Positions 1,645-14,367 of a stretch of 64,000 bases of DNA are shown here, piece by piece. Location of the stretch: the IMG/VR virus record IMGVR_UViG_3300044972_002389, positions 1-64,000 of that record; one strand, 5' to 3'. The position numbers and the translations under genes were made by a program. The stretch's first letter is position 1; each line of letters starts with the position of its first letter. Below the pieces are notes generated by a model, which was not told the DNA's origin, made no database searches, and was given only the letters and a program-made list of their open reading frames with translations.

Positions 1645-4600
1645 TTAACCACTAGACTCAATACTCAAAATAAATGGTGTTACAAGGCCAAACAAGCTTT
1701 TGGCAAACACACGTCCACTAAGTGTGCCAGTATTCTGATTGATAACTAATCCTTCGCCAATACGGAAGTCACCTTTGTGATCGGTGCTAGTGTAGTAAAT
1801 TCTCCCACCGCGTCTCATTACAACTTCGTTTTCCTGTATAGGTACACCACCTAACTGAGGCAAGCAGGTGTTGATATCTGTTCCTGCGCCCACATATTCA
1901 AAAGTGTGACTGGATGCAGATGCAACACTTACTTGATAAAAGTTTACAGTTTCATCATCCAAAGGTGCATAGTCTGTAACTTCTTCAAGTGTGACAGTTG
2001 TTTCGTTTTCCACAGTATCGCTGAGCAGTGACCCACCGGCTCCTACTAAATCAGCTGCTACTGCATCCACAATAAATCCAGTGTCACGTGTACACAAGCT
2101 CAGTTGATCAGCTGTTAAGAACCCTGGACCAAAAGTATTCAACACATATTGCGTTACTTCTGCTTGAATAAATTGCTTGTTCAATCGTAACAATTGACTG
2201 GAATTATTCCAGCGTAGATTTTTGGGACCATAGAGGGGGTTTATTGTGCTGATCAATACATCAAAAGAGGCTTCCAAGTTTTGTGAGCTATAACTGCCAT
2301 AATTTAATGCTGGGTTGACTACTTGTGGCACAACCCCCTGGATAGGTATAATTGCACTATTGGTGATAACGTCCATAACCAACGTGCGTAGTTGGGTCAA
2401 AGCAGCGATGGTTTGACTTTCTTGCCCACCAATCAAGCTGGTTACACCGTTCCAGTAATTTCTACCACTACGCAAGGCCTCAATTACTCCACCTTTTGTT
2501 GCATCAAGTGTCATGCCATCTACAATCAATCCCACATCTCGTTCACACAGTGTCAGTTGTGCGGGTGATAAAAATCCAGGATAGGTAATACTTACCCATG
2601 CACCAATTTCAGCTTGGAGGAATGCTCTGTTGGCCTGTAGGAGCAGTCCTGCATGGGTATATCTTATATTGGCTACACTTAAGCCATCGTTAATAAATGT
2701 GGTTATATGGTCGAAAAATGCTGTTACGCCATTCAAAGTAGCTGCTCCACCACTCAAACTTCCATTTGTAACTTGTGCTACAGAAACTTGCAGCGGAACA
2801 ACAGCAGTGTTTTGAACTATGTTTTGACTTAGACTCTTGGCGAAATTTATGGCCTGAATAGTTTGTGTTGATTGACCAGGTATCAAACTGGTTACACCAT
2901 CCCAATAGCGTTGGCCACTTCTGAAACTAAGGCTTGCTGCCAATGGTGCTGGTATTACAGGGCCCCCATTTATTACCAACGGCGTGGCACTACTTATAGT
3001 GTAGTATTTTGGATACAATTTAGCCTCAGCAATAGCAGGAGTACCCCCAGCCCCAATGATATCACCACTGACGCTGTCAATAACTTGGCCAATGAGTTTG
3101 GCAAAATTAGCTTTCTCATCTGTAGTCATAGACACCAAAGTATTTGCATATGCTGTTACTTCAGCTTGTAAGAATGCATAATTGGCTTTCAAAAGAGCAC
3201 TTGCACTATTATATCCTGTAAATGGCAGGCCGTTGGAGATCAAGTTGGTGATAACATTCACTGCTGCTGTTAAGTTAGAGGCAGCATACACTCCATTTGT
3301 AAGCACTGGATTGACACTTGCGGTCACTGCTGTTTGGAAAGGTGCACCTGGGTACGCACCTGGTGGAGTTGATATATTGTTGATAAGATTCAACCCCCAT
3401 GCCAAGATATAATTGATCGCATCAATAGTTTCCGCAGCTTGTCCTGGAAGCTTACTGACTATCCCATTCCAGTAAGATTGTCCTGCTCGTATACTTCTTA
3501 CAAAGCCGCCAGTTGAACAGTCAATTGAGAGAGCATCAACAATGTATCCAACATCTCTGCTGCATAGTGCTTGTAGTCTAGCTGCCTCTGTGGGATTACC
3601 ACCAGCTAATGCGTTGAAGAATCCTGGATACTGCCAATTCACATAAGCCAATACCTCTGCTTGTAAGAAGGCTTTGTTCAGGAGCAGCAAGCTACTGGCA
3701 TTGTCGTAAGGACTCAGGCTTGTCCCGTAATTTATTATTTGACTTGTATTTGTAAAGAACGCAGTCACCCCAGTTGTGGCATCCAATCCGTTGGGCAAAG
3801 CTGGATCAACAACAGGCAGCTCAGTAGCTTGATAAGGACTGCCAACATATCCGGCAGGTGGGGTTGGGTTGTTATCAATCAGATTATATGCCCAGTCTCT
3901 AGCATATGTGATAGCTAGCAATGTATTTGCTGTGTCAATAGGACTGACTGCTGCCTTAGCAGTCAAAAAGCTGAAGCTTTCAGCATCACCACCTTGGAAT
4001 CTTACTCGAGGACCAGCACTGTAACTGTTACCGCCGCTTGCTAGATCAATAGCTGCAAGGCCCATACTGAGATCAAGTAAGCATCCTGTGCCACTTCCAC
4101 TGAGAACATACTGAGTTTCAACGCCATTTAGTGTAGGCATCTTTGAATATTTGCCAGCTGTGTCAATAACAACTCTTGTTACAATACCAGACGTAAATCC
4201 ATTTGATGCGACAGCAACTACTCGGACACGAGTTCTCGCCGTGCCTTCTCCTCCAACCACCTCGAGCAGGTCATTTATTTGATAGCCTTGCCCACCATTG
4301 AAATAGGTGTTGTTTGAGGTTGTAAAGACACTGTTTACGCTAGCACCAACAGCTTGATACCAAATTTGGCCAGCTTTGGCACCAGCGCCCCCGCCTCCTG
4401 AGAAGCGCACAGTGGGGTCAATTACAAAGTTTGATCCTGGATTTGTAATCCGTATATTTGTGACAACACCAGCTGTTACCTCAGTAATAGCTGTTGCACC
4501 AGTGTCGCCATTACCTGATCCTCCACCACCCTCAATAGTGACAATGGGTTGAGCTATATAACCACCGCCCTGACTTATGAGTGTGACTTCACGAATTGTG

Positions 4601-7600
4601 CCAGTTGTGTTGTCATACTCTGCACGACCTTTGGCTGTGATGCCACCGCCACCACTTATAGTAACAGTGGGGCTTGTGTAACCTGTGCCACTGCTGGCGA
4701 GATTTATACTGTTTACGCCAAAATTGATACTGCAACTGAATCCAGTTCCTATGCCGCTGCTAGTGGTAGCCGCACCAGAAACTATAGGGAGGTCTGTGTA
4801 TTCGCCTTCATCAATCACAAAAACTGATGTTACTGCACCTCCCAAACCTACAGCAGCTACTTGAAGCAACACTGGCGTATTCACTTGCAGATTTGGGAAA
4901 GTTCCTCCACTAATTGTTATGGTGTCGTTAAGTGCATAACCGCGACCACCATTCAAAATAGCCACTCCGCTAGCTATATCGCTTCTGCAACTGTAAATCA
5001 CCGCACCAATAATTGCTCCAGTACCACTGGGATCGTAAATTGTTGCGTATGCGCCGCCTGTATAACCAGATCCTTTTTCTATATTATTCAACGCGGTAAT
5101 AGCTCCACTTGTTACTACTGCTTGAAATTCAGCACGCTGTCTTGCGTAACCAATTGGTGGATCCAACAGCACTAGGGGTGTACTAGTATATCCCTGTCCT
5201 TGATCAATTACTTGTATTTCGCTCACATAGCTGAACTCAGGACCAACAGTAGCCACAAGGCCCACAAATGGACGTTGGATAATATTCTTGATGTCAATAG
5301 TATCAACACGGAATCGTCCCGTGCCAGCTTTGATTCTGCCGCCATAGAGATAGGGACTTATGCCATCAGCCAAAATACCAATATCTCCGAAGCTGGTATT
5401 GCTGTTGCTTATGCTGCATGTTGCACCATTTTCTACCCATGTGCCAATTGTAGTACAGATAGTGAAGATTGACACCAACTGTGCGTAACCTTGGTTTGTA
5501 ATGTAGATGCCAGGACCGCCTTGGTTATATTGAGTGAAGCCATCCAAAACCATACTCTTCAAACCTTTGGCAAGGTTTCCATCCACTTTCATCCCACCGC
5601 CAGTTTCGTTAAAACATGTGCAGTTTTGAACATAAGGACTTGTGCTGATTACTCCTGCTCCCCCAGGCACACCAGGAGGAAGATCGGGATCGCCTGCCAA
5701 AGGAGGATAGGTGATAGCAAATCCTGGCGCCTTACCACCTCTGAAACTCACGCCTGCAATGTAACAGGCATTGTTGACCCAAAAGAAGTCTTTTGTAGGA
5801 TTATTGTAAAAGAGATTTACTCTACGCAAGTTATCGCCAATAACTGACACTCGCTCAGGCAAATAGATGGGGTTGTTTTCGTAATAGTTGCCGCTTCGGA
5901 CAAAAATTGTTGTAAATGGTTTTGCGATTGCAGCAGCAGCTTTGACGGTTCTTTTTGCCCGGTCTTCAGCCAAACCATCATTGTTGTCATCACCATCTTT
6001 TGTTACCCAAATTACGTTAGTAACAGCAGGTGCAGTACCTTTGCTAACGCCAGTTACTACCAAATCACCAACACTTACTCTGGCGCCTGTCATTACAGGT
6101 GTTACACGAGCCGTATTACCAGACGGGCTTGGTTGCACAATTGCTTTGGGTGTATTTGTGTATCCACTACCACTGCTGTTGACTATGGCAGCAATCAGAC
6201 CGTAGCTGAGATTTACCCTAGCGCCAGTTCCTGTTCCACCAACTACAGGGTTGTTCAGCAATGTGGGTAGGAAACTATAGTATCCAGGATCAGTAATAAT
6301 AAGAGTGTTGATCTCACTCACCATATTGAATTGAACGCCGTAACCGCTGCCGCCAGTGGCTTTGTTATTGGTCAAAGGTGGCAGGGTGTAGTAAGGTCCT
6401 TGATTTTGGAGTTGGCAAGTGCTCTCAGTAACACTGTATTTGGCTGCTGTTTGATATTCAGTAAGTAGGCCACGGCCACTGCCACCAACAGCGGGGTTAG
6501 CCACAATATTGGGCAGTTCTCTATAAGACCCTGAGTTGTTGATTGTTATGTCTGTTACACGTCCGCCCAAAATAACAGAAATAACTGAGCCATTACTAGG
6601 AGGGTTCACAAAGGTAAGCCTGGTCACACTAGCGGGCTGACTTACTGTGTAGTTTGTACCCAGTGTTTGTTTCACGTTGTCAAGAGTCACATACAAATCA
6701 AAATAGTCAGCTGGTATAATTGCACGGCTGAGATCAAAGTTTGTTTCAACCCCGTCACCTGAGAAACTATTGTAAAATACACCAATTACATCGCCAGCTT
6801 GCAGAGAAAAGGCTGGCAAGAATGTGATATCTGTTTGCAGGCCGTTGGGCGCAAAGCTGTATACAGCCCCTAGGATAATCGTGCCATTTAACGTAACAGT
6901 AACGCCACTATAATCCAATGGATCAATAGTGAATGGAACTGTATAGGTTTTGATTGCTGGATTTGTAACAAAATTGTTTGTATCATATTTCCCCGATATT
7001 TGAATGGGGTCAGCTGAGATAATAGATGTGGCAGGTGTGCCTGAACCACCAAAAACAGTGATTTCCTCACCTGTGATGTATCCCACACCTTGTGCAATTA
7101 TTTGTGGTTCAATCAATTTGACTCTAGTGATAATAATAGTAGCTGATGCTGGTCCATCACCACCACTGACAGTGAGAATATCATTGGGCTTATACCCACG
7201 TCCTTCATTGTTGGCATCAACAAGTATGCTCTTGATTCTAGCTGTTTCCACTTGTAACAAAGTGGGTGCAGAGAATACTCCGCCTTGAACTGTCAAGGCG
7301 TCGCCTGGCGTATATCCAGCGCCACGATCCCAGGGCACAACGATAGGTACAGCGCCCATAACAGCTTCTGCAACAGCTTGCACGCCACCAGGTGGTGGTG
7401 GATCAATTGTAATAGCTGGAACAAGTGTGTATCCGCTTCCAGGATTGTTGATATTCAAGCTAGTAACTTGCCCTTTGGCATTCAAATTCAAAATACCTGT
7501 AGCCAAGCTGTTGGTGATTACATCATTATCAATTAAAACTTGGTCTACAGCCAGCTTACTGGCGTTGAGTTTAGATCCGTCCCATTTGAGATCTGCTGAT

Positions 7601-9138
7601 CCAGCAAATGTTCCCCCATTATTGAATTGAACAGCTTGTGTGGGTCCACCAGGTGTGCCCCCTGGTCCGGCTGGGCCGGTGGGACCTCCTAAGGGGCCGG
7701 TTGGGCCGGTTGCACCAACAGGACCAGCAGGGCCGCCTGACGGTGCAGGAATGGGTTGTGGACCTGTCTCCAAAATGTTGATGATAAGATCAATACGTGC
7801 AACAATGTCATTTGTCCAAAGTCCACCATCAGTGTAGGCGATGTCAAATACTTGGGGCACCAAACTGTAAACAGGTGCAACTGAGGTGTTTGTAACCACA
7901 TCGTTCATCAGGGTTTTTAGATGGTTCAAGGCCGCAACAGTAACCTCTACCTGTCCAGGTATTACTGTTTTCCCAGACTCATAATATTTGTTGCCAGCTA
8001 GGTAGCTATTGAGATTGATGCCACTCAAAACATCGCTCATAACACACGCGGCAATCAGTTGCACATCACGAGCACATTTGTTTTGATCGTAAAAGTAAGG
8101 GGCTGGAAATTGGTTGTTGATCCAGCCAACTACTTCTTGACTCAAGAATTCAAGGTTCAAATATACCAGTGTTTGTGCGCTGAAATTTCCCAACGAGGTG
8201 GGAACAAAGTTGGCATATTCAGTGCTGGGTCCAGTTAGGATAATATTATTGATAATCGCAATATTGCTGGCAATAGGAGCATAGGCTACTACGCCGCCAC
8301 TGAAGCTGGGTATAATTACTTGACTGGGTGGTACAACAGCTGGATAATCTGGTACAATAGCGATATTAGCAACGATTTTTTGAACCAAACTCAATGCATA
8401 AGTTAACGCATCAACAGTCAATTGTTTCTGCGCAGGTGTATTATAAATTAAAACACTTGTAACACCGTTCCAGTAAGCGTTGCCAGCTGCAACACTGTTA
8501 TAAGTAGAGCCCAGCAATGTGTCATTCATTACAGCAAACAGGATAGTAGTCAAGTCTCTGCTGCATTTTTCCAGTTGAGAGGGGGTTAAAGAATAACCCA
8601 GGGGATAATTGCCTTGTACCCAAGAATTAACTTGCGCCCGAATAAATGGCAAATTGTAGATAACCAAGGCAACTGCGTTCAATAAACCTTGATTTTGTGT
8701 AATTTGACCAGGGCTACCATCTGACAAGAGGTACCAAGCTGTGCCGTTGTAATATTCCAACTTGTTATAATCAGTATTGAATCTGATCATACCTGTAGAG
8801 GGAGCAAGTGGGTTACTTGCTGGCCGTTGCGCCGTCAAGCCCACTGGAACCCTGATAGCTCCAGTCCCAGGGAATTGGATGCTGTTTTCTAAATCGCTGT
8901 TTTGGAATCTTGTTACAACCAAGGTGCCGTTGGGATCGCTTGTTAAAACAACCTTGTTGCTTTGAACAGGTCCAGATAACCTCACTGTGGTATTTTGTAG
9001 GTTGGAGATTTCAGCAGCCGCAACAGCAAGTTGAACTCTCATTGCCTCAAAATTGTCTCTGAAACCCTGACTTTCATTGTCAGAACCGGCCACAGGATAG
9101 TTGGTGTTGATACTGTCTGGTCTAATGTTGCTGGTCAT
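1645..9138 (-). CDS. Giant virion structural/fibre protein (~2497 aa) with pectin-lyase-like beta-helix region, GxGYT repeats and CxRD helical repeats
   Basis: Long ORF; likely start MTSNIRPD at 9138; motif VTKDGDDNNDG..AKRTVKAA..IFVRSGNYYE..GDNLR typical of pectin-lyase-fold tail proteins; many (N/D)xGxGYTxxP repeats; short collagen stretch. Confidence 0.8.
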   Translation of the reverse strand: MTSNIRPDSINTNYPVAGSDNESQGFRDNFEAMRVQLAVAAAEISNLQNTTVRLSGPVQSNKVVLTSDPNGTLVVTRFQNSDLENSIQFPGTGAIRVPVGLTAQRPASNPLAPSTGMIRFNTDYNKLEYYNGTAWYLLSDGSPGQITQNQGLLNAVALVIYNLPFIRAQVNSWVQGNYPLGYSLTPSQLEKCSRDLTTILFAVMNDTLLGSTYNSVAAGNAYWNGVTSVLIYNTPAQKQLTVDALTYALSLVQKIVANIAIVPDYPAVVPPSQVIIPSFSGGVVAYAPIASNIAIINNIILTGPSTEYANFVPTSLGNFSAQTLVYLNLEFLSQEVVGWINNQFPAPYFYDQNKCARDVQLIAACVMSDVLSGINLNSYLAGNKYYESGKTVIPGQVEVTVAALNHLKTLMNDVVTNTSVAPVYSLVPQVFDIAYTDGGLWTNDIVARIDLIINILETGPQPIPAPSGGPAGPVGATGPTGPLGGPTGPAGPGGTPGGPTQAVQFNNGGTFAGSADLKWDGSKLNASKLAVDQVLIDNDVITNSLATGILNLNAKGQVTSLNINNPGSGYTLVPAITIDPPPPGGVQAVAEAVMGAVPIVVPWDRGAGYTPGDALTVQGGVFSAPTLLQVETARIKSILVDANNEGRGYKPNDILTVSGGDGPASATIIITRVKLIEPQIIAQGVGYITGEEITVFGGSGTPATSIISADPIQISGKYDTNNFVTNPAIKTYTVPFTIDPLDYSGVTVTLNGTIILGAVYSFAPNGLQTDITFLPAFSLQAGDVIGVFYNSFSGDGVETNFDLSRAIIPADYFDLYVTLDNVKQTLGTNYTVSQPASVTRLTFVNPPSNGSVISVILGGRVTDITINNSGSYRELPNIVANPAVGGSGRGLLTEYQTAAKYSVTESTCQLQNQGPYYTLPPLTNNKATGGSGYGVQFNMVSEINTLIITDPGYYSFLPTLLNNPVVGGTGTGARVNLSYGLIAAIVNSSGSGYTNTPKAIVQPSPSGNTARVTPVMTGARVSVGDLVVTGVSKGTAPAVTNVIWVTKDGDDNNDGLAEDRAKRTVKAAAAIAKPFTTIFVRSGNYYENNPIYLPERVSVIGDNLRRVNLFYNNPTKDFFWVNNACYIAGVSFRGGKAPGFAITYPPLAGDPDLPPGVPGGAGVISTSPYVQNCTCFNETGGGMKVDGNLAKGLKSMVLDGFTQYNQGGPGIYITNQGYAQLVSIFTICTTIGTWVENGATCSISNSNTSFGDIGILADGISPYLYGGRIKAGTGRFRVDTIDIKNIIQRPFVGLVATVGPEFSYVSEIQVIDQGQGYTSTPLVLLDPPIGYARQRAEFQAVVTSGAITALNNIEKGSGYTGGAYATIYDPSGTGAIIGAVIYSCRSDIASGVAILNGGRGYALNDTITISGGTFPNLQVNTPVLLQVAAVGLGGAVTSVFVIDEGEYTDLPIVSGAATTSSGIGTGFSCSINFGVNSINLASSGTGYTSPTVTISGGGGITAKGRAEYDNTTGTIREVTLISQGGGYIAQPIVTIEGGGGSGNGDTGATAITEVTAGVVTNIRITNPGSNFVIDPTVRFSGGGGAGAKAGQIWYQAVGASVNSVFTTSNNTYFNGGQGYQINDLLEVVGGEGTARTRVRVVAVASNGFTSGIVTRVVIDTAGKYSKMPTLNGVETQYVLSGSGTGCLLDLSMGLAAIDLASGGNSYSAGPRVRFQGGDAESFSFLTAKAAVSPIDTANTLLAITYARDWAYNLIDNNPTPPAGYVGSPYQATELPVVDPALPNGLDATTGVTAFFTNTSQIINYGTSLSPYDNASSLLLLNKAFLQAEVLAYVNWQYPGFFNALAGGNPTEAARLQALCSRDVGYIVDALSIDCSTGGFVRSIRAGQSYWNGIVSKLPGQAAETIDAINYILAWGLNLINNISTPPGAYPGAPFQTAVTASVNPVLTNGVYAASNLTAAVNVITNLISNGLPFTGYNSASALLKANYAFLQAEVTAYANTLVSMTTDEKANFAKLIGQVIDSVSGDIIGAGGTPAIAEAKLYPKYYTISSATPLVINGGPVIPAPLAASLSFRSGQRYWDGVTSLIPGQSTQTIQAINFAKSLSQNIVQNTAVVPLQVSVAQVTNGSLSGGAATLNGVTAFFDHITTFINDGLSVANIRYTHAGLLLQANRAFLQAEIGAWVSITYPGFLSPAQLTLCERDVGLIVDGMTLDATKGGVIEALRSGRNYWNGVTSLIGGQESQTIAALTQLRTLVMDVITNSAIIPIQGVVPQVVNPALNYGSYSSQNLEASFDVLISTINPLYGPKNLRWNNSSQLLRLNKQFIQAEVTQYVLNTFGPGFLTADQLSLCTRDTGFIVDAVAADLVGAGGSLLSDTVENETTVTLEEVTDYAPLDDETVNFYQVSVASASSHTFEYVGAGTDINTCLPQLGGVPIQENEVVMRRGGRIYYTSTDHKGDFRIGEGLVINQNTGTLSGRVFAKSLFGLVTPFILSIESSG

Positions 9139-9165
9139 GGATATCCACACTAATCGCGTTTTTTC

Positions 9166-9236
9166 ATATTTATGGGTTGGCACAATTTGTGTTTTTGATC
9201 CATGATTTAACAGTCATCAAGCGTCACGCTTAAATA
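9166..9236. promoter_or_regulatory. Divergent pair of late-type TAAATA motifs
   Basis: CATAAATA on minus (9166-9173) and TTAAATA on plus (9230-9236) between divergent genes. Confidence 0.55.
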
Positions 9237-10078: not shown

Positions 10079-10606
10079 ATGGTTCACAAAATTCTCGAAA
10101 ATTTTTCAGATCAAGCTGAAGAAGTAATCAAAAAGCTTACAGCCAAACAAGACTTATTGGATGTTATGCTGGATATTGAGGATTACTTTGATAACAACAA
10201 TCTCTATGTATTTGACAATTGGTTCAAAGGTGAGCTTGTAAATGGCCCATTGGTAAAAAAATACTGGATTGAAGTGACCTTCAAATACCCATACCATCAC
10301 ATGCCTGATCCTGAAGGTGGGTTGAGACTTACTCAACATGGCACCAAAATACAATATGAAAAAACTTTTCAAACGGTGCCTGTGCCTATCCATAGTCCTG
10401 ATGACTATGAACCTGGTACCAAGAAGCCGCGAATGAAAAAAGAAAAGGTTTGGCTTATTCACATGAAAATACCACGCCGCTTTGTTGAAACTCTTGATCC
10501 TGAAATGCTAGACATTTACGATGAAGAGGTAGAGGACACCGACATGGACAATGCTGAAGACCAGATGGCGCAAGGTCAGGCACCTGGGTTGGAGATGAAT
10601 ACATGA
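10079..10606 (+). CDS. Hypothetical phage protein
   Basis: ORF; ATG at 10079; CATAAATA at 10045-10052 upstream; acidic C-terminus. Confidence 0.7.
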   Translation: MVHKILENFSDQAEEVIKKLTAKQDLLDVMLDIEDYFDNNNLYVFDNWFKGELVNGPLVKKYWIEVTFKYPYHHMPDPEGGLRLTQHGTKIQYEKTFQTVPVPIHSPDDYEPGTKKPRMKKEKVWLIHMKIPRRFVETLDPEMLDIYDEEVEDTDMDNAEDQMAQGQAPGLEMNT

Positions 10607-11316
10607 ACCTGAAGGAAGGACTGCGCAAAGGTGACTTGGACGGGTTGATACTTCCGCTTGTTACTGTGGATGAATATGAGTCCAAAATTGGCGATGATGA
10701 AGCTGTTGTTGTGGGATTTTATGCATTGGAAGCGGATGCTGCGCACGATTTAAGTAATTTTATTGAGAGAGCGCCTTACATGGTGTTGGATACTGATGTA
10801 AGTCCAGCCCCAACAAAGGACGGTTACTACGTATGCTTTGCTGAACTCAATCGCACACTGGACTTTCCTAACGCTTTGATTTCCTTGTTAAATGATATAA
10901 CAAAACTATGTAATATTGATGATTGGCAATTTACTACTGTGAACTTACCCAAGGACAAAATTGTGCCCTTGACTGAGAAAAATTTGAAAAAAACTGTAAA
11001 CTGCAATGTACGTGAAACCAAAAACACTGACGAACAAAATGTCAAAAGGTTCTTCAAACATAGCAGCTTGAAAGAAGTATCGTGGGCAGATGGGCAACTA
11101 ACTCTCTCTGAACGTGCATACAGAAAAACGTTTCAGGTAGACACCTTGACAAATGTTGTGCCCCAAGGCCCGGTGGATTTGAGTGAATCAGGCAGTAGCG
11201 AATGCAGAGTTCTAGAAAAAGCATTAGCGGGGCCCTACAGCGTCCACAAGCTGGGAGAGCAGTTGGTTGTGGAAAATTGGAACCTCCAAAAATTTTTAGT
11301 GTTAACACCCCTCTAA
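10603..11316 (+). CDS. Hypothetical phage protein
   Basis: 237-aa ORF overlapping the previous stop (ATGA). Confidence 0.7.
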   Translation: MNLKEGLRKGDLDGLILPLVTVDEYESKIGDDEAVVVGFYALEADAAHDLSNFIERAPYMVLDTDVSPAPTKDGYYVCFAELNRTLDFPNALISLLNDITKLCNIDDWQFTTVNLPKDKIVPLTEKNLKKTVNCNVRETKNTDEQNVKRFFKHSSLKEVSWADGQLTLSERAYRKTFQVDTLTNVVPQGPVDLSESGSSECRVLEKALAGPYSVHKLGEQLVVENWNLQKFLVLTPL

Positions 11317-11339
11317 GTGTTGTTACTAGCGTCACCTCC

Positions 11340-11820
11340 CCTATAATCTACGAACTATTATAGGTTTTGATATCGTGGTAATGTGTCCACGGGCGGAAGG
11401 GATGGTGACCCATCAGGAACGCAAACAACTCGGCGCCCCTATACGCCGGACCGGGAAGCACCGCTGTTTGTCTTGACACATGCTCTCCAGTGCGAACCCG
11501 GAATACACAACCAAGTGACAAAGTAGGTTGAAAAATTATCTTTGCGATGTGATGCATCGCATAAAAAGGATCGCTCTGAGGTGGTCATTCTCATCGATCA
11601 GGACGCAATTCAAGGTAGCTGATGCCCTTGGTTGTGTTTGCCGCTGCTGAACCCTGTGTTCGAGGTAGTGAATGCATACTGGTACCGAGCAACCGCCAGT
11701 TTTTGGTTTTCCCAAACATTCATCCAAATCATGCTCTCTATACGGCGCCATACCAGGCACTTGAGACAATTTACCTCCCCAATTAGCCGTTGGGGAGAGT
11801 ATGATCTCTTCCAACACCAC
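11340..11820 (+). ncRNA. Candidate large structured non-coding RNA (unclassified)
   Basis: Long gap with no credible CDS and many nested stems (see findings); strand assumed from flanking genes. Confidence 0.55.
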
Positions 11821-11849
11821 CCAGAACATGAATATATGAAAATCTTCTA

Positions 11850-11878
11850 TTGCATCATAAAATATCAGATGCTATGTT
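11850..11878 (+). promoter_or_regulatory. Sigma70-like promoter TTGCAT-17-TATGTT
   Basis: Spacing and position upstream of 11907. Confidence 0.4.
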
Positions 11879-11906
11879 GATCTCAGATAAAAAGGATCGG
11901 CAAAAA

Positions 11907-12062
11907 ATGTGGTTTATTCTGCTTATGGCTGTGATAGCCGCAGTGTATGGCCTAGGAATGGTAGCTAATATCATAGGCTACTTTTTCCTATTCATTGGGC
12001 TTGGAATTGCCGCTCTAGTGGCACTGATCGTTATCGGTGCCGTTCTCGCAGATGGGAACTGA
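11907..12062 (+). CDS. Small membrane protein (2 TM)
   Basis: ATG 11907 after AAGGA; almost entirely hydrophobic. Confidence 0.6.
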   Translation: MWFILLMAVIAAVYGLGMVANIIGYFFLFIGLGIAALVALIVIGAVLADGN

Positions 12063-12064
12063 AG

Positions 12065-12424
12065 ATGACAGTGTGGGACAAAATTGCCGCTAGGGCTTAT
12101 GATAATCAGGACCCGTGTCCTGTTCACCCGCTACGCCCTACTCTGGGTCCCAATCCCAGTGCAGGAGAGGCTCAGGCATATGCTGATGCGCTCACGCATT
12201 ATGAGAAGGTAGCTCTACCCGAACACGAGGTGGCTTATAAGCTATACATAGCTCAATGTGCCGAGTTGGCTGCACCTTTCCAAGATGATCTCGAAGAGTA
12301 TTATGGCATGAAGGGTCATCCCAAAGCAGAGCTGCTCTACTGGAAGAGCTATGAGCGTGGTCACTACGCGGGCTTCAGTCAGATTGCCAGCGCCTACAGT
12401 GACCTTGTGGAACTTGTGAAGTGA
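12065..12424 (+). CDS. Hypothetical protein
   Basis: 119-aa ORF tightly packed with neighbours. Confidence 0.7.
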   Translation: MTVWDKIAARAYDNQDPCPVHPLRPTLGPNPSAGEAQAYADALTHYEKVALPEHEVAYKLYIAQCAELAAPFQDDLEEYYGMKGHPKAELLYWKSYERGHYAGFSQIASAYSDLVELVK

Positions 12425-12437
12425 GAGAAAGCTGCTG

Positions 12438-12611
12438 TTGCCCCAGCCTGTCACTGTGCAGAGTAACCGACAACAGTTGGATGCTCAAATAGAGTGGTGC
12501 CAGCAGAATCTGCCACGCTATACCTGGCGATGTTATGTCACTCATTTTTGGTTTGACAGTCAAGAAACTGCTACCCATTTTGCCTTGATATGGAGCACAA
12601 ACGATGGTTGA
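12438..12611 (+). CDS. Small Trp-rich protein (WC...FWF...F-x-L-x-W family), not in ORF track
   Basis: Manual translation ..LDAQIEWCQQNLPRYTWRCYVTHFWFDSQETATHFALIWSTNDG*; fills the gap and matches the pattern of genes at 61152-62371; TTG start uncertain. Confidence 0.65.
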   Translation: MPQPVTVQSNRQQLDAQIEWCQQNLPRYTWRCYVTHFWFDSQETATHFALIWSTNDG

Positions 12612-13233
12612 CGTTCGACTGCTGCGTGATGCTGCTATTGCAGAGAGCAACAACGGCTTCAACGTGCATGATGAGCTAAAAACTCTCACAGTTGAAGAGC
12701 TCAAGAATGTAACCCAAGCTAGCCTCAAAAATTTTGAAGTTCTGTGCCTCAACGTGCTGGGCGACTTGAACATTAGCACCATTATCAGAAGCAGTCACCT
12801 TTTTGGGGCTCGTAAGGTGCATGTGTTTGGTCGCCGACGCACTGACAACAGAGGCCTAGTGGGAGCTCAAAATTACACCCAAGTGGACCGGGTACAAGGA
12901 CTCCTAGAGGATGGGGTTACTATCGATCCTGATGCCTTTTGGCGTTATGTGGACCAGGAGAGGCTCTATCCTGTTTTTGTTGAGCAGGGAGGCACCAATG
13001 TTTATGAGTTTGATTGGAATGAGAGCCTACTAGATGCCAACAGCCTTGGTCGAACCATGTGCTTGATCATGGGCACTGAGAACAGCGGCATTCCACAAAG
13101 CATTCTCAAGGATGTTGACATGGTAGACCAAGCTGTGAGCATTCCTCAAACCGGCGTCATCCGAAGCCATAATGTAAGCATGGCTTTTGCTGTTGTGTGC
13201 GGTCAGATGGTTAGCGCACTTAAATGGTATTGA
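12604..13233 (+). CDS. SpoU/TrmH-family RNA 2'-O-methyltransferase
   Basis: N-I-S-T-I-I-R-S motif 1, LIMGTENSGI motif 2, VSIPQTGVIRSHNVSMA motif 3 (SPOUT). Confidence 0.88.
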   Translation: MVDVRLLRDAAIAESNNGFNVHDELKTLTVEELKNVTQASLKNFEVLCLNVLGDLNISTIIRSSHLFGARKVHVFGRRRTDNRGLVGAQNYTQVDRVQGLLEDGVTIDPDAFWRYVDQERLYPVFVEQGGTNVYEFDWNESLLDANSLGRTMCLIMGTENSGIPQSILKDVDMVDQAVSIPQTGVIRSHNVSMAFAVVCGQMVSALKWY

Positions 13234-13258
13234 CGTAGCGAAGATATTTCGCTATAAA
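13230..13258 (+). promoter_or_regulatory. Sigma70-like promoter TTGACG-17-TATAAA
   Basis: Near-consensus boxes; spacer is itself an inverted repeat TAGCGAA..TTCGCTA. Confidence 0.6.
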
Positions 13259-13342
13259 TGAATTGAGCGTTGTGCTCGATCTTGTGAAAGTGGTTTTCAC
13301 AAGTTAACTCCAAAAAATGCTGCGGCATAGGAGAAGACTAAA

Positions 13343-13537
13343 ATGGCTCGTAATTTTGATATCGCTCAGCGTGCTTTTGATAACCGTTTTGTTGTCTGGG
13401 CAGAAATTGATCACCCCGAAGCAGACCGTGATTGGTACCTGAAGAACGGACTTGCAGTACCCCAGCAGTGGGTGGCTGTAGCTGTTACTCATACCAAGGA
13501 GGCTGCTATCCGCGCCACCAAACAGGTTAAGATTTAA
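13343..13537 (+). CDS. Hypothetical protein
   Basis: 64-aa ORF with GGAG RBS downstream of a promoter. Confidence 0.65.
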   Translation: MARNFDIAQRAFDNRFVVWAEIDHPEADRDWYLKNGLAVPQQWVAVAVTHTKEAAIRATKQVKI

Positions 13538-13567
13538 CCTCAAAAACAAAAAACTTGGATACTACCT

Positions 13568-13599
13568 GAGCTGGGAATTATTTTCCCAGCTCTTTTTTT
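13568..13599 (+). terminator. Intrinsic terminator
   Basis: GAGCTGGGAA-ttatt-TTCCCAGCTC 10-bp stem followed by a T run, at a convergent gene junction. Confidence 0.75.
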
Positions 13600-13964
13600 C
13601 TGATGGCTTGATCAAACAGCTCTAGTATCTGTTGTTTTGTTTGAGGTTCAATTTGCTGGCAACGGGTGATTTCCGCATCAGGAAAATACTGCAAGATTTC
13701 AGTCACAGCTTGATTTTCTGACTCGGCAACAATAAACGAAGCCAACTCCACATCTTGAATATAATTTTGGTTGATTTCATCTAGCAGTGATTGGTTCTTG
13801 GTTTGAAACGCATCAGCTACCAATTCCTCAGTTACAGTCAATGAGCTCTTGCAGGATGTTCTTTTTTTATACATGTGGCCCTGTTGTAAGGGATACCAGA
13901 CCCAAGGAGTAGTAACTTCCTCTTCTTGCCATGTTCGCCAACTTATGTAGTGGATGCTGTTCAT
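13578..13964 (-). CDS. Hypothetical protein
   Basis: ORF 13578..14027; likely ATG at 13964. Confidence 0.6.
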   Translation of the reverse strand: MNSIHYISWRTWQEEEVTTPWVWYPLQQGHMYKKRTSCKSSLTVTEELVADAFQTKNQSLLDEINQNYIQDVELASFIVAESENQAVTEILQYFPDAEITRCQQIEPQTKQQILELFDQAIRKKELGK

Positions 13965-14118: not shown

Positions 14119-14367
14119 ATGAGCAAAGAAGATTACATCACAGTCAACGGCACAGTTATTGAAGTTTGTCCCAACAGTCTGTTCAGAGTACAATTGGAAA
14201 ACGGACTTACAATACTAGCTCACTTGGCTGGCAAATTGAGAATCAACAACATCAATGTCCATCATCTTGATCATGTGACCGTAGAGCTAAGCGCATATGA
14301 TTTGACGAAAGGACGCATTGTCTACCGACAAAAGCGCCCTCCTCGGAATTCCAACGCTACTCATTGA
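14119..14367 (+). CDS. infA: Translation initiation factor IF-1
   Basis: [41 protein letters not shown]...[20 protein letters not shown], the classic IF-1 pattern. Confidence 0.95.

What the first reader, a model, noticed from the sequence alone, without database searches (positions are those of the whole stretch)
11340..11820. Candidate novel ~480-nt multi-domain structured RNA
Seen: the largest non-coding gap in an otherwise gene-dense window, with only spurious-looking ORFs and many nested helices. Domain 1: ATGTGTC(11381-87)/GACACAT(11475-81) encloses GATGG/CCATC(11401-14), GCAAACA(11421-27)/TGTTTGT(11465-71) and CGGCG/CGCCG(11431-48). Other stems: CCTATAAT/ATTATAGG(11340-64), CAACC/GGTTG(11508-30), TGCGATG/CATCGCA(11543-61) and CAAGG/CCTTG(11611-30). 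Domain 2: CTGGTA(11679-84)/TACCAG(11751-56) encloses CCG/CGG and AGCA(11688-91)/TGCT(11732-35). A final stem is CTCCCCAA/TTGGGGAG(11775-97). I see no tRNA, tmRNA, RNase P (GAGGAAAGUCC) or intron hallmarks. Known: phages encode large ornate RNAs such as GOLLD and ROOL. Inference: this may be an undescribed class; a SpoU RNA methyltransferase and IF-1 lie within 3 kb.
Basis: partly seen in the sequence, partly recalled or inferred. Interest (0 to 1): 0.8.

Follow-up and report, generated by a model that had tools for sequence, protein, structure and literature searches.

The report
New large structured phage RNA gene
The gap holds a roughly 470-base non-coding RNA gene with its own promoter and an elaborate, evolutionarily conserved fold; it occurs in many uncultured freshwater phages, matches no catalogued RNA family, and so looks like a new class of large phage RNA whose function is unknown.

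Summary
The finding holds up. Window 11354-11830 (+) is a stand-alone non-coding RNA gene.

- **Family:** a motif search in viral and metagenome contigs, followed by nhmmer, recovered about 73 full-length copies (40 distinct, 412-474 nt, median 56% identity). They come from phage contigs of 19-330 kb. None was found in 185,579 bacterial or archaeal species genomes.
- **Structure:** about 14 helices are supported by compensatory changes. RNAalifold gave 48 of 67 pairs with double changes. In the 5' domain 99.7% of cells are paired, against about 30% when the partners are slid.
- **Strand:** G-U pairs outnumber A-C pairs 402 to 60, and a sigma-70-like promoter sits at the same place in most members. 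Both point to the + strand.
- **Independence:** flanking genes differ between phages and are often on the opposite strand, so this is not a leader or an intron.
- **Coding:** no reading frame is conserved.
- **Known families:** Rfam 15 gives no match for 10 members, no tRNA genes lie nearby, and no cultured phage carries it.
- **Copy number:** the same jumbo phage carries a second, divergent copy outside the window.
six of the twelve are correct. The stem CCTATAAT/ATTATAGG is really the -10 promoter box.

Function is unknown. The most likely role is a compactly folded, trans-acting RNA comparable to GOLLD or ROOL.

The parts
11320..11347 (+). Sigma-70-like promoter: -35 TTGTTA (11320-25), 16-nt spacer, -10 TATAAT (11342-47). 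The predicted start is near 11354.
   Evidence: Scan (10 of 12 matches). A comparable -35/-10 pair sits at the same distance upstream of the conserved block in most of 33 members. In L036 and L056 it directly follows a terminator-like hairpin with a T run.
11354..11830 (+). The RNA gene, about 475 nt. The ends are predicted, not mapped.
   Evidence: The nhmmer profile matches 11365-11836 (E 6e-107). The model of the 5' domain matches 11367-11505 at 138.8 bits, and this is the only copy in the window. No reading frame is conserved.
11369..11805 (+). Tentative closing helix GATAT (11369-73) / ATGAT (11801-05), which would bring the 5' and 3' ends together.
   Evidence: RNAalifold with RIBOSUM scoring. 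The pairs are mostly conserved with some one-sided changes and a few mismatches. Inferred.
11374..11391 (+). Hairpin A: CGTGG / CCACG.
   Evidence: 4 of 5 pairs have compensatory changes and 100% of cells are paired (helix 1).
11392..11645 (+). Long-range helix GGCGG (11392-96) / CCGCT (11641-45), enclosing the central multi-helix domain.
   Evidence: Predicted by RNAalifold. All ten columns are invariant, so covariation cannot test it. A local alternative, GCG/CGC, exists.
11401..11414 (+). Hairpin B: GATGG / CCATC.
   Evidence: 3 of 5 pairs are compensatory (UA/CG, GC/AU, GC/CG) (helix 3).
11413..11425 (+). Invariant block TCAGGAACGCAAA; apart from its first two bases, which close hairpin B, it is left unpaired by the consensus fold.
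   Evidence: Invariant in 36 of 36 sequences, though CAGGAACGCAAA was part of the search pattern. No complementary site in the window.
11430..11449 (+). Hairpin C: TCGGCG / CGCCGG.
   Evidence: 5 of 6 pairs are compensatory, with up to five pair types per position (helix 4).
11451..11501 (+). Helix D: CCGGG (11451-55) / CCCGG (11497-11501), with inner helix CGCTG (11462-66) / CAGTG (11488-92) and a conserved internal loop (AAGCAC / CGAA).
   Evidence: helices 5 and 6: 7 of 8 pairs are compensatory. Coordinates.
11508..11530 (+). Hairpin E: CAACC / GGTTG. Variable and optional.
   Evidence: The alignment shows different complementary arms in other members (for example GATTCT/AGAATC and GTGCCC/GGGCAC). 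It is absent in 6 members.
11538..11666 (+). Candidate pseudoknot: ATCT (11538-41) with AGGT (11663-66).
   Evidence: 89% of cells are paired in register against 36-66% out of register. There is one compensatory event, in the L036/L068 lineage. Inferred.
11543..11561 (+). Hairpin F: TGCGATGT / GCATCGCA, with a conserved G-U-NNN-G-C top.
   Evidence: 6 of 8 pairs are compensatory (columns 204-222).
11569..11599 (+). Helix G: GATCG / CGATC, with a short inner stem (11577-81 / 11590-93).
   Evidence: Compensatory changes at 3 of 5 outer pairs (columns 233-263).
11601..11639 (+).
   Evidence: All 9 pairs listed are compensatory (columns 267-303). Extent.
11648..11662 (+). Hairpin I: TGAACC / TGTTCG.
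   Evidence: 5 pairs, all with compensatory changes (columns 314-331).
11678..11700 (+). Hairpin K: ACTGGT / GCCAGT, closing a highly conserved loop (GTACCGAGCAACC, 11682-94). The loop holds the palindrome GTAC in 33 of 36 members.
   Evidence: 4 of 6 stem pairs are compensatory (columns 364-386). Loop conservation is seen. The first hint came from the L022 comparison.
11701..11773 (+). Variable region with lineage-specific small hairpins and short conserved blocks (CAAAAYC, YCUAUAC).
   Evidence: Poorly alignable; read by eye only.
11774..11798 (+). Hairpin M: CCTCCCCA / TGGGGAGA.
   Evidence: columns 469-492. The inner pairs are compensatory (UA/CG/AU, GC/AU).
11806..11830 (+). C/A-rich, G-poor 3' tail (CTCTTCCAACACCACCCAGAAC). 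No intrinsic terminator follows.
   Evidence: Semi-conserved across members. No terminator-like site on the + strand.

Best explanation
Window about 11354-11830 (+) is a stand-alone gene for a non-coding RNA of about 470 nt. It belongs to a previously uncatalogued family carried by uncultured freshwater phages.

**Shown.** The family exists: about 73 full-length copies, of which 40 are distinct. It keeps about 14 helices through compensatory mutations. The + strand is the folded strand. No reading frame is conserved. It matches no Rfam 15 family. Its neighbours and their orientation vary.

**Inferred.** Host RNA polymerase transcribes it from its own sigma-70-type promoter. The transcript folds into a compact core: a long-range helix (GGCGG/CCGCU) closes a multi-helix junction, and invariant unpaired blocks and the K-loop form tertiary contacts or a binding surface. 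It then acts in trans during infection.

**Most likely mode of action (a guess).** It works as a folded RNA particle that binds host or phage machinery, or assembles with itself, as the phage-encoded ornate RNAs ROOL and GOLLD do. It does not appear to act by antisense pairing or by regulating a gene in cis.
For: - **Homologues:**
- **Covariation:** 48 of 67 pairs have double changes. Over 86 pairs, 92.3% of cells are paired, against 74% in shuffles and about 41% with slid partners. In the 5' domain 99.7% are paired, 19 of 27 pairs are compensatory, and 0 of 500 shuffles reach the observed score.
- **Strand:** 402 G-U cells against 60 A-C cells, and a positionally conserved promoter.
- **Independence:** both flanking genes are on the opposite strand in 15 loci, on the same strand in 13, and mixed in 10. 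No protein neighbour is universal.
- **Insertion:** cultured relatives (121Q, Phosso) have the same two virion structural genes with no gap after them.
- **Non-coding:**
- **No known family:**
- **Phage-only:** the six genome-contig hits score 19 bits or less with the model.
- **No antisense targets** in the window.
- **RNA libraries:** pieces are present in four aquatic metatranscriptomes.
Against: - Transcription, RNA ends and abundance are not shown. The metatranscriptome contigs are at low depth, the runs were chosen for holding this sequence, and DNA carry-over cannot be excluded.
- One contig runs through the predicted -10 box of a relative.
- No terminator follows the conserved block.
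- The single-sequence folding z-score is unremarkable on the + strand.
- The long-range helix and the pseudoknot rest on invariant or nearly invariant columns.
- All homologues were collected with one exact 22-base motif, so the invariance of that motif is partly circular.
- Nothing bears directly on what the RNA binds or does.
Confidence: 0.82

Rival explanations
1. It is an RNA-only self-assembling particle (homo-oligomer or cage) like ROOL or GOLLD. This is a specific version of the best explanation.
For: It is phage-encoded, large, ornate and has no constant protein partner. A 4-base palindrome, GUAC, is conserved in the K-loop in 33 of 36 members, and this could make a symmetric kissing contact. 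ROOL and GOLLD set the precedent (PMC12286853).
Against: The palindrome does not switch to other palindromes; the three exceptions (GCAC twice, GUAA once) simply break it. There is no sequence or model similarity to ROOL or GOLLD. There is no tRNA neighbourhood.
Confidence: 0.15
2. It is a ribozyme of a new class, for example for RNA processing, ligation or self-cleavage.
For: Its size, its many helices around invariant unpaired nucleotides, and a candidate pseudoknot are typical of large ribozymes.
Against: No substrate, no conserved cleavage or splice site, and no resemblance to RNase P or to group I or II cores. This is speculation from its form alone.
Confidence: 0.1
3. It is a cis-acting leader or riboswitch that controls the downstream gene.
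For: In the window lineage the next genes are on the same strand.
Against: In 20 of the loci with a called downstream ORF, that ORF is on the opposite strand. The downstream genes are unrelated between lineages. In the window and in L081 the downstream gene has its own promoter-like site. At about 470 nt it is far larger than known riboswitches.
Confidence: 0.04
4. It is a self-splicing intron (group I-like) or another mobile ribozyme.
For: It is mobile between unrelated phage backbones and is absent from cultured relatives at the same site. It also has a candidate pseudoknot.
Against: It lies between genes, not within one. The upstream ORF ends with a stop before the promoter. The flanks share no exon-like continuity. 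There is no hit to the intron models in Rfam. The order of helices does not fit P3-P9.
Confidence: 0.03
5. It is a sponge or decoy for a host RNA-binding protein, for example a CsrA-type regulator that binds GGA motifs.
For: Several conserved GGA motifs lie in segments left unpaired. A host-type promoter suggests early expression (inference).
Against: GGA is not clearly enriched (mean z 1.6 over 36 members). The hairpin loops do not carry GGA. The architecture is far more constrained than that of CsrB- or RsmZ-type sponges.
Confidence: 0.05
6. It is a DNA-level element (replication origin, packaging site or protein-binding array), or a protein-coding region that was missed.
For: It is a large gene-free stretch with many inverted repeats. 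A 97-aa ORF lies on the minus strand.
Against: Pairing is kept by compensatory changes with a strong G-U over A-C asymmetry that fits only one RNA strand. The ORF is not conserved: it has frame shifts and stops in the homologues and no Pfam hit.
Confidence: 0.02

Closest known systems
ROOL and GOLLD RNAs (large ornate RNAs of phages and prophages)
   Same: They are encoded by phages, run to several hundred nucleotides, and have many covarying helices around conserved junctions. They have no known protein partner and no known function, and each is a stand-alone gene (PMC12286853).
   Different: The Rfam 15 scans found no match to any family for 10 members. It is shorter (412-474 nt, against more than 800 nt for many GOLLD members). 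No tRNA genes are nearby. It was found only in uncultured aquatic phage contigs and not in bacterial genomes or prophages. Oligomerisation is untested.
OLE, raiA and HEARO (other large bacterial structured RNAs)
   Same: They share the general look: a large RNA with many conserved helices and conserved unpaired blocks.
   Different: Those are chromosomal or transposon RNAs with characteristic partner genes (OapA-C; IscB for HEARO). None of these was seen among the Pfam and PHROG hits to the neighbouring proteins that were scanned, and the Rfam scans found no match. The partner names are from my own knowledge of the literature.
Bacterial RNase P RNA
   Same: A short local resemblance to E. coli M1 RNA: GGGCGGA(A/G)GGGA followed by AGGAA. 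This is recalled from memory and is a lead only.
   Different: There is no GAGGAAAGUCC block and no P4 long-range pairing, the helix order differs, and the Rfam scans found nothing. The resemblance falls partly in E. coli's non-conserved P3, so it is best read as chance.
Group I introns of phages
   Same: A structured RNA of a few hundred nucleotides that is mobile between phages and has a possible pseudoknot.
   Different: It is not inside a gene, it has its own promoter, it shows no splice-site features, and the Rfam scans found no match.

Membership tests
GOLLD / ROOL (Rfam families) | Scores above threshold, or at least weakly, against the family covariance model. | tested here: not met
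   cmscan of the whole window at gathering score gave 0 hits. The window 11100-12100 at E up to 10 gave only four chance hits to eukaryotic families. Nine other members at E up to 5 gave nothing in the element.
GOLLD / ROOL (Rfam families) | Often located next to tRNA genes or islands in phages and prophages. | tested here: not met
   ARAGORN found 0 tRNA genes in the 64-kb window and 0 in 38 loci that carry the RNA.
GOLLD / ROOL (Rfam families) | Forms RNA-only homo-oligomeric cages. | not testable with these tools
   This needs in vitro transcription with native gel or cryo-EM. The only lead is the conserved GUAC palindrome in the K-loop.
Group I intron | Interrupts a host gene whose exons join into one reading frame. 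| tested here: not met
   The upstream ORF stops at 11316, before the promoter. The flanking genes differ between loci and are often on the other strand.
Group I intron | Conserved P3-P9 core recognised by the Rfam group I intron model. | tested here: not met
   No hit at permissive thresholds. Seven helices lie between the two strands of the long-range helix, unlike P3/P3'.
RNase P RNA | Universal conserved regions (GAGGAAAGUCC and others), the P4 pseudoknot, and a match to the Rfam models. | tested here: not met
   No Rfam hit, and the GAGGAAAGUCC block is absent from the sequence.
tmRNA / tRNA-like | A tRNA-like domain and a tag reading frame detectable by ARAGORN. | tested here: not met
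   ARAGORN found none.
CsrB/RsmZ-type protein sponge | Many GGA motifs, enriched and presented in hairpin loops. | tested here: not met
   There are 7-15 GGA motifs per member, with a mean z of 1.6 against dinucleotide shuffles. The conserved GGA motifs lie in junctions, not in loops.
Riboswitch / cis leader | Lies in the 5' untranslated region of the gene it regulates, on the same strand, with a conserved class of downstream gene. | tested here: not met
   The downstream ORF is on the opposite strand in 20 loci, and the downstream genes are unrelated across lineages.
Guide or template RNAs of mobile elements (TnpB/IscB omega RNA, retron or DRT ncRNA) | Adjacent gene for the partner nuclease or reverse transcriptase. 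| tested here: not met
   The neighbours scanned are virion structural proteins, PhoH, SpoU, IF-1, an exonuclease, Hsp70, a phosphatase and small unknown proteins. No Pfam or PHROG hit to a nuclease of that kind or to a reverse transcriptase was found among them.

The most novel reading that the evidence does not exclude
This is a new class of catalytic or self-assembling RNA that lytic freshwater phages, including a roughly 330-kb jumbo phage with two diverged copies, express early from a host-type promoter to act on host machinery. In other words, it would be a third phage 'ornate RNA' architecture beside ROOL and GOLLD, or a new natural ribozyme.
Probability: 0.2. Interest if true: 0.92.

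Novelty: categorically new. Interest (0 to 1): 0.82.

Why it matters
Large RNAs with intricate conserved folds are rare. Nearly every class whose function is understood turned out to be a ribozyme, a ribonucleoprotein core or, recently, an RNA-only cage.

This family is large and well supported by covariation. It is confined to phages, moves between unrelated phage genomes, and has no partner protein. It therefore gives a new, directly testable case for the open question of what phages use ornate RNAs for.

It is short enough (about 450 nt) for in vitro transcription, chemical probing and cryo-EM. The alignment already gives a usable secondary-structure model.

As an RNA family it has no detectable relative, which is why I rate it categorically new. 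The broad category of phage-encoded ornate RNAs of unknown function does have precedents.

Tried and rejected
- **Rfam.** The whole window at gathering score, the region at E up to 10, and nine other members at E up to 5 gave nothing relevant.
- **ARAGORN.** No tRNA or tmRNA.
- **Cultured phages.** blastn of four family members against 50,697 phage records gave no match.
In viral contigs it mostly hit an unrelated coding family by chance, but it did reveal the divergent homologue L022.
- **Bacterial genomes.** The motif hit six genome contigs; all are false by nhmmer and by the covariance model.
- **Constant protein partner.** None was found. The 237-aa virion structural gene lies upstream only in the window lineage (9 loci). 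Its distant homologues in megaphage contigs and in 121Q and Phosso have no RNA next to them.
- **Minus-strand 97-aa ORF.** Not conserved.
- **GCAAA/UUUGC pairing next to the long-range helix.** Rejected, because one side is invariant while the other varies without compensation (read).
- **P7-like pairing and pairing of the 3' tail with internal loops.** No consistent covariation (inspection).
- **CsrA-sponge idea.** GGA is not enriched.
- **Antisense targets of the conserved single-stranded blocks in the window.** None beyond chance.
- **Resemblance of the K-loop to the sarcin-ricin loop, and of CCGCUGCUG to the antisense of the 16S 530 loop.** Considered from memory and dropped. The closing pair cannot form in the first case, and the bases are not conserved in the second.
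- **Literature.** Six full-text searches and three papers gave no description of this RNA. The 2023 catalogue of 8,495 short candidate RNAs from IMG/VR could not be checked because its tables are not held.

Full report
**What is at the coordinates.**
The stretch 11317-11907 lies between ORF 10603-11316 (+) and a small membrane-protein ORF (ATG 11908-12062). The upstream ORF is 237 aa and matches PHROG 13138, 'virion structural protein'. The stretch holds only short unconserved ORFs. Its G+C content (0.50-0.52) is a little above the flanks. Single-sequence folding is unremarkable, with a z-score of -1.22 on the + strand and -2.10 on the - strand.

**Origin of the window.**
The window is the first 64 kb of a 328.6-kb viral contig. 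The same phage was assembled with 100% identity over this region in eight samples. Its two virion structural genes upstream of the gap have homologues (30-35% identity) in cultured jumbo phages such as Escherichia phage 121Q (gp62-63) and Sinorhizobium phage Phosso. In those phages the next gene follows within about 10-40 nt. The element is therefore an insertion relative to them.

**Finding relatives.**
It also hit L022, a 7.4-kb contig with different flanking genes.
- L022 is colinear with the window over islands of identity. Three hairpins there keep their pairing with different sequences.
- I then used a gapped pattern built from two blocks identical in both sequences (GGCGGAAGGG, 8-30 nt, CAGGAACGCAAA). 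It is expected less than once by chance in the viral collection.
- The pattern found 30 viral and 46 metagenome loci.
- An nhmmer profile confirmed about 73 full-length copies of 412-474 nt. Forty are distinct, with a median pairwise identity of 56% and a minimum of 46%.
- They sit on contigs of 19 kb to 330 kb.
- The six hits in 185,579 bacterial and archaeal species genomes are all false: no nhmmer hit, and 19 bits or less with the covariance model against 105-150 bits for true members.
- blastn of four members against 50,697 cultured-phage records found nothing.
- The RNA-library runs that hold the sequence are labelled lake water, aquaculture, aquatic and freshwater.

**Structure.**
On a 36-sequence alignment, RNAalifold predicts 67 pairs, of which 48 show compensatory double changes.

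| Test | Observed | Shuffled 3' partners | Partners slid 1-3 columns |
|---|---|---|---|
| 86-pair RIBOSUM structure, cells paired | 92.3% | 74% | about 41% |
| 86-pair structure, covariation score | 0.545 | 0.196 | 0.09-0.14 |
| 5' domain model alignment, cells paired | 99.7% | 79.6% | 26-36% |

For the 5' domain, 19 of 27 pairs have double changes, and 0 of 500 shuffles reach the observed score.

The supported helices, in window coordinates, are:
- A: 11374-78 / 11387-91
- B: 11401-05 / 11410-14
- C: 11430-35 / 11444-49
- D: 11451-55 / 11497-11501, with an inner stem 11462-66 / 11488-92
- E: 11508-12 / 11526-30 (optional)
- F: 11543-50 / 11554-61
- G: 11569-73 / 11595-99
- H: 11601-14 / 11627-39
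- I: 11648-53 / 11657-62
- K: 11678-83 / 11695-11700
- M: 11774-81 / 11791-98

Three further pairings are plausible but rest on invariant or nearly invariant columns:
- A long-range helix GGCGG / CCGCU (11392-96 / 11641-45) that would close the central domain.
- A pseudoknot AUCU / AGGU (11538-41 / 11663-66).
- A closing helix at 11369-73 / 11801-05.

Between the helices lie invariant blocks left unpaired, and a 13-nt conserved loop on helix K.

**Strand, promoter and independence.**
- In the paired columns G-U cells outnumber A-C cells 402 to 60, which fits only the + strand as RNA.
- A sigma-70-like promoter (TTGTTA, 16 nt, TATAAT, at 11320-47) precedes the conserved block. A comparable -35/-10 pair sits at the same place in most members, in two cases directly after a terminator-like hairpin with a T run.
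- The flanking genes are both on the opposite strand in 15 loci, both on the same strand in 13, and mixed in 10. No protein family accompanies the RNA throughout.
- No tRNA gene lies in the window or in 38 loci.
- The homologous region of the 97-aa minus-strand ORF has frame shifts and stops in most members.

Together these exclude a coding region, a DNA element, a cis leader and an intron as far as sequence analysis can.

**Transcription.**
Four aquatic metatranscriptomes contain assembled pieces of the RNA or of close relatives (171-206 nt laid on the RNA, 90-98% identical). This is weak evidence. The runs were selected for holding this sequence, depth is low, and neighbouring genes also appear. 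One contig extends through the predicted -10 box of a relative. No intrinsic terminator follows the conserved C/A-rich tail.

**Comparison with known families.**
- The Rfam 15 scans found no match to any family for ten members.
- The closest analogues by kind are ROOL and GOLLD: phage-encoded, ornate and of unknown function, and now known to form RNA-only cages (PMC12286853).
- This RNA shares none of their sequence or helix order. It is smaller and lacks their tRNA neighbourhood.
- A short resemblance to E. coli RNase P RNA, recalled from memory, does not extend to any defining feature.
- GGA motifs are not enriched.
- The conserved single-stranded blocks have no complementary sites in the window.
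- Six full-text searches found no description of it. A 2023 catalogue of short candidate RNAs from the same viral database could not be checked.

**Further points.**
The same jumbo phage carries a second copy, 65% identical to the window copy and closer to copies in other phages. The gene therefore moves between phages, and two versions are kept in one genome. Absence from bacterial genomes suggests carriage by lytic phages (inference).

**Verdict.**
That it is a folded, trans-acting RNA gene is well supported. How it acts is not known. My preferred guess is a compact RNA particle that binds host or phage machinery or self-assembles, and this is marked as inference.

Noticed in passing
L028:8854-9334 (- strand), same 328.6-kb contig as the window but outside it; also L034, L040, L046, L047: A second copy of the RNA, 65% identical, in the same jumbo phage. 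It is alone on its strand among tandem arrays of paralogous ORFs of about 100-120 aa and near an Rv2179c-like 3'-5' exonuclease gene. That exonuclease family lies about 0.8-2.3 kb downstream in 9 loci from several sub-lineages.
   Followed up: partly
window 13232-13600: A compact expression unit: promoter-like TTGACG...TATAAA, a Shine-Dalgarno site, a 64-aa ORF (13343-13537, no Pfam hit) and a strong terminator (13568-13600). Metatranscriptome contigs also cover it.
   Followed up: partly
window 12604-13233 and 14119-14367: The phage encodes a SpoU-family RNA methyltransferase and a translation initiation factor IF-1 homologue within 3 kb of the RNA. No link to the RNA is seen in other loci.
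   Followed up: partly
window 1645-9183 (-): A 2512-aa ORF without any Pfam match.
   Followed up: no
L102 (Sinorhizobium phage Phosso) and L103 (Escherichia phage 121Q): Cultured jumbo relatives keep the pair of virion structural genes (121Q gp62-63) but have no gap or RNA after them. Distant homologues of the 237-aa protein in 265-608 kb viral contigs (L009-L013) also lack the RNA.
   Followed up: yes
L022:6742-7225 (+); also L039, L088: A divergent subfamily that keeps all the helices and the K-loop but has an almost unalignable 3' half. It is flanked by two paralogous ORFs of 182-183 aa, whose relatives recur as tandem arrays near the RNA in the 71-kb phage (L033, L038).
   Followed up: partly
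L038:5933-7765 (-): A 71-kb phage that carries the RNA also encodes a full-length Hsp70/DnaK (611 aa, E 3e-256) 2-4 kb away.
   Followed up: no
window 11364 (run X3 contig): One metatranscriptome contig of a close relative continues 54 nt upstream of the conserved block, through the predicted -10 box. This is either read-through from the upstream structural genes or DNA carry-over in the library.
   Followed up: no
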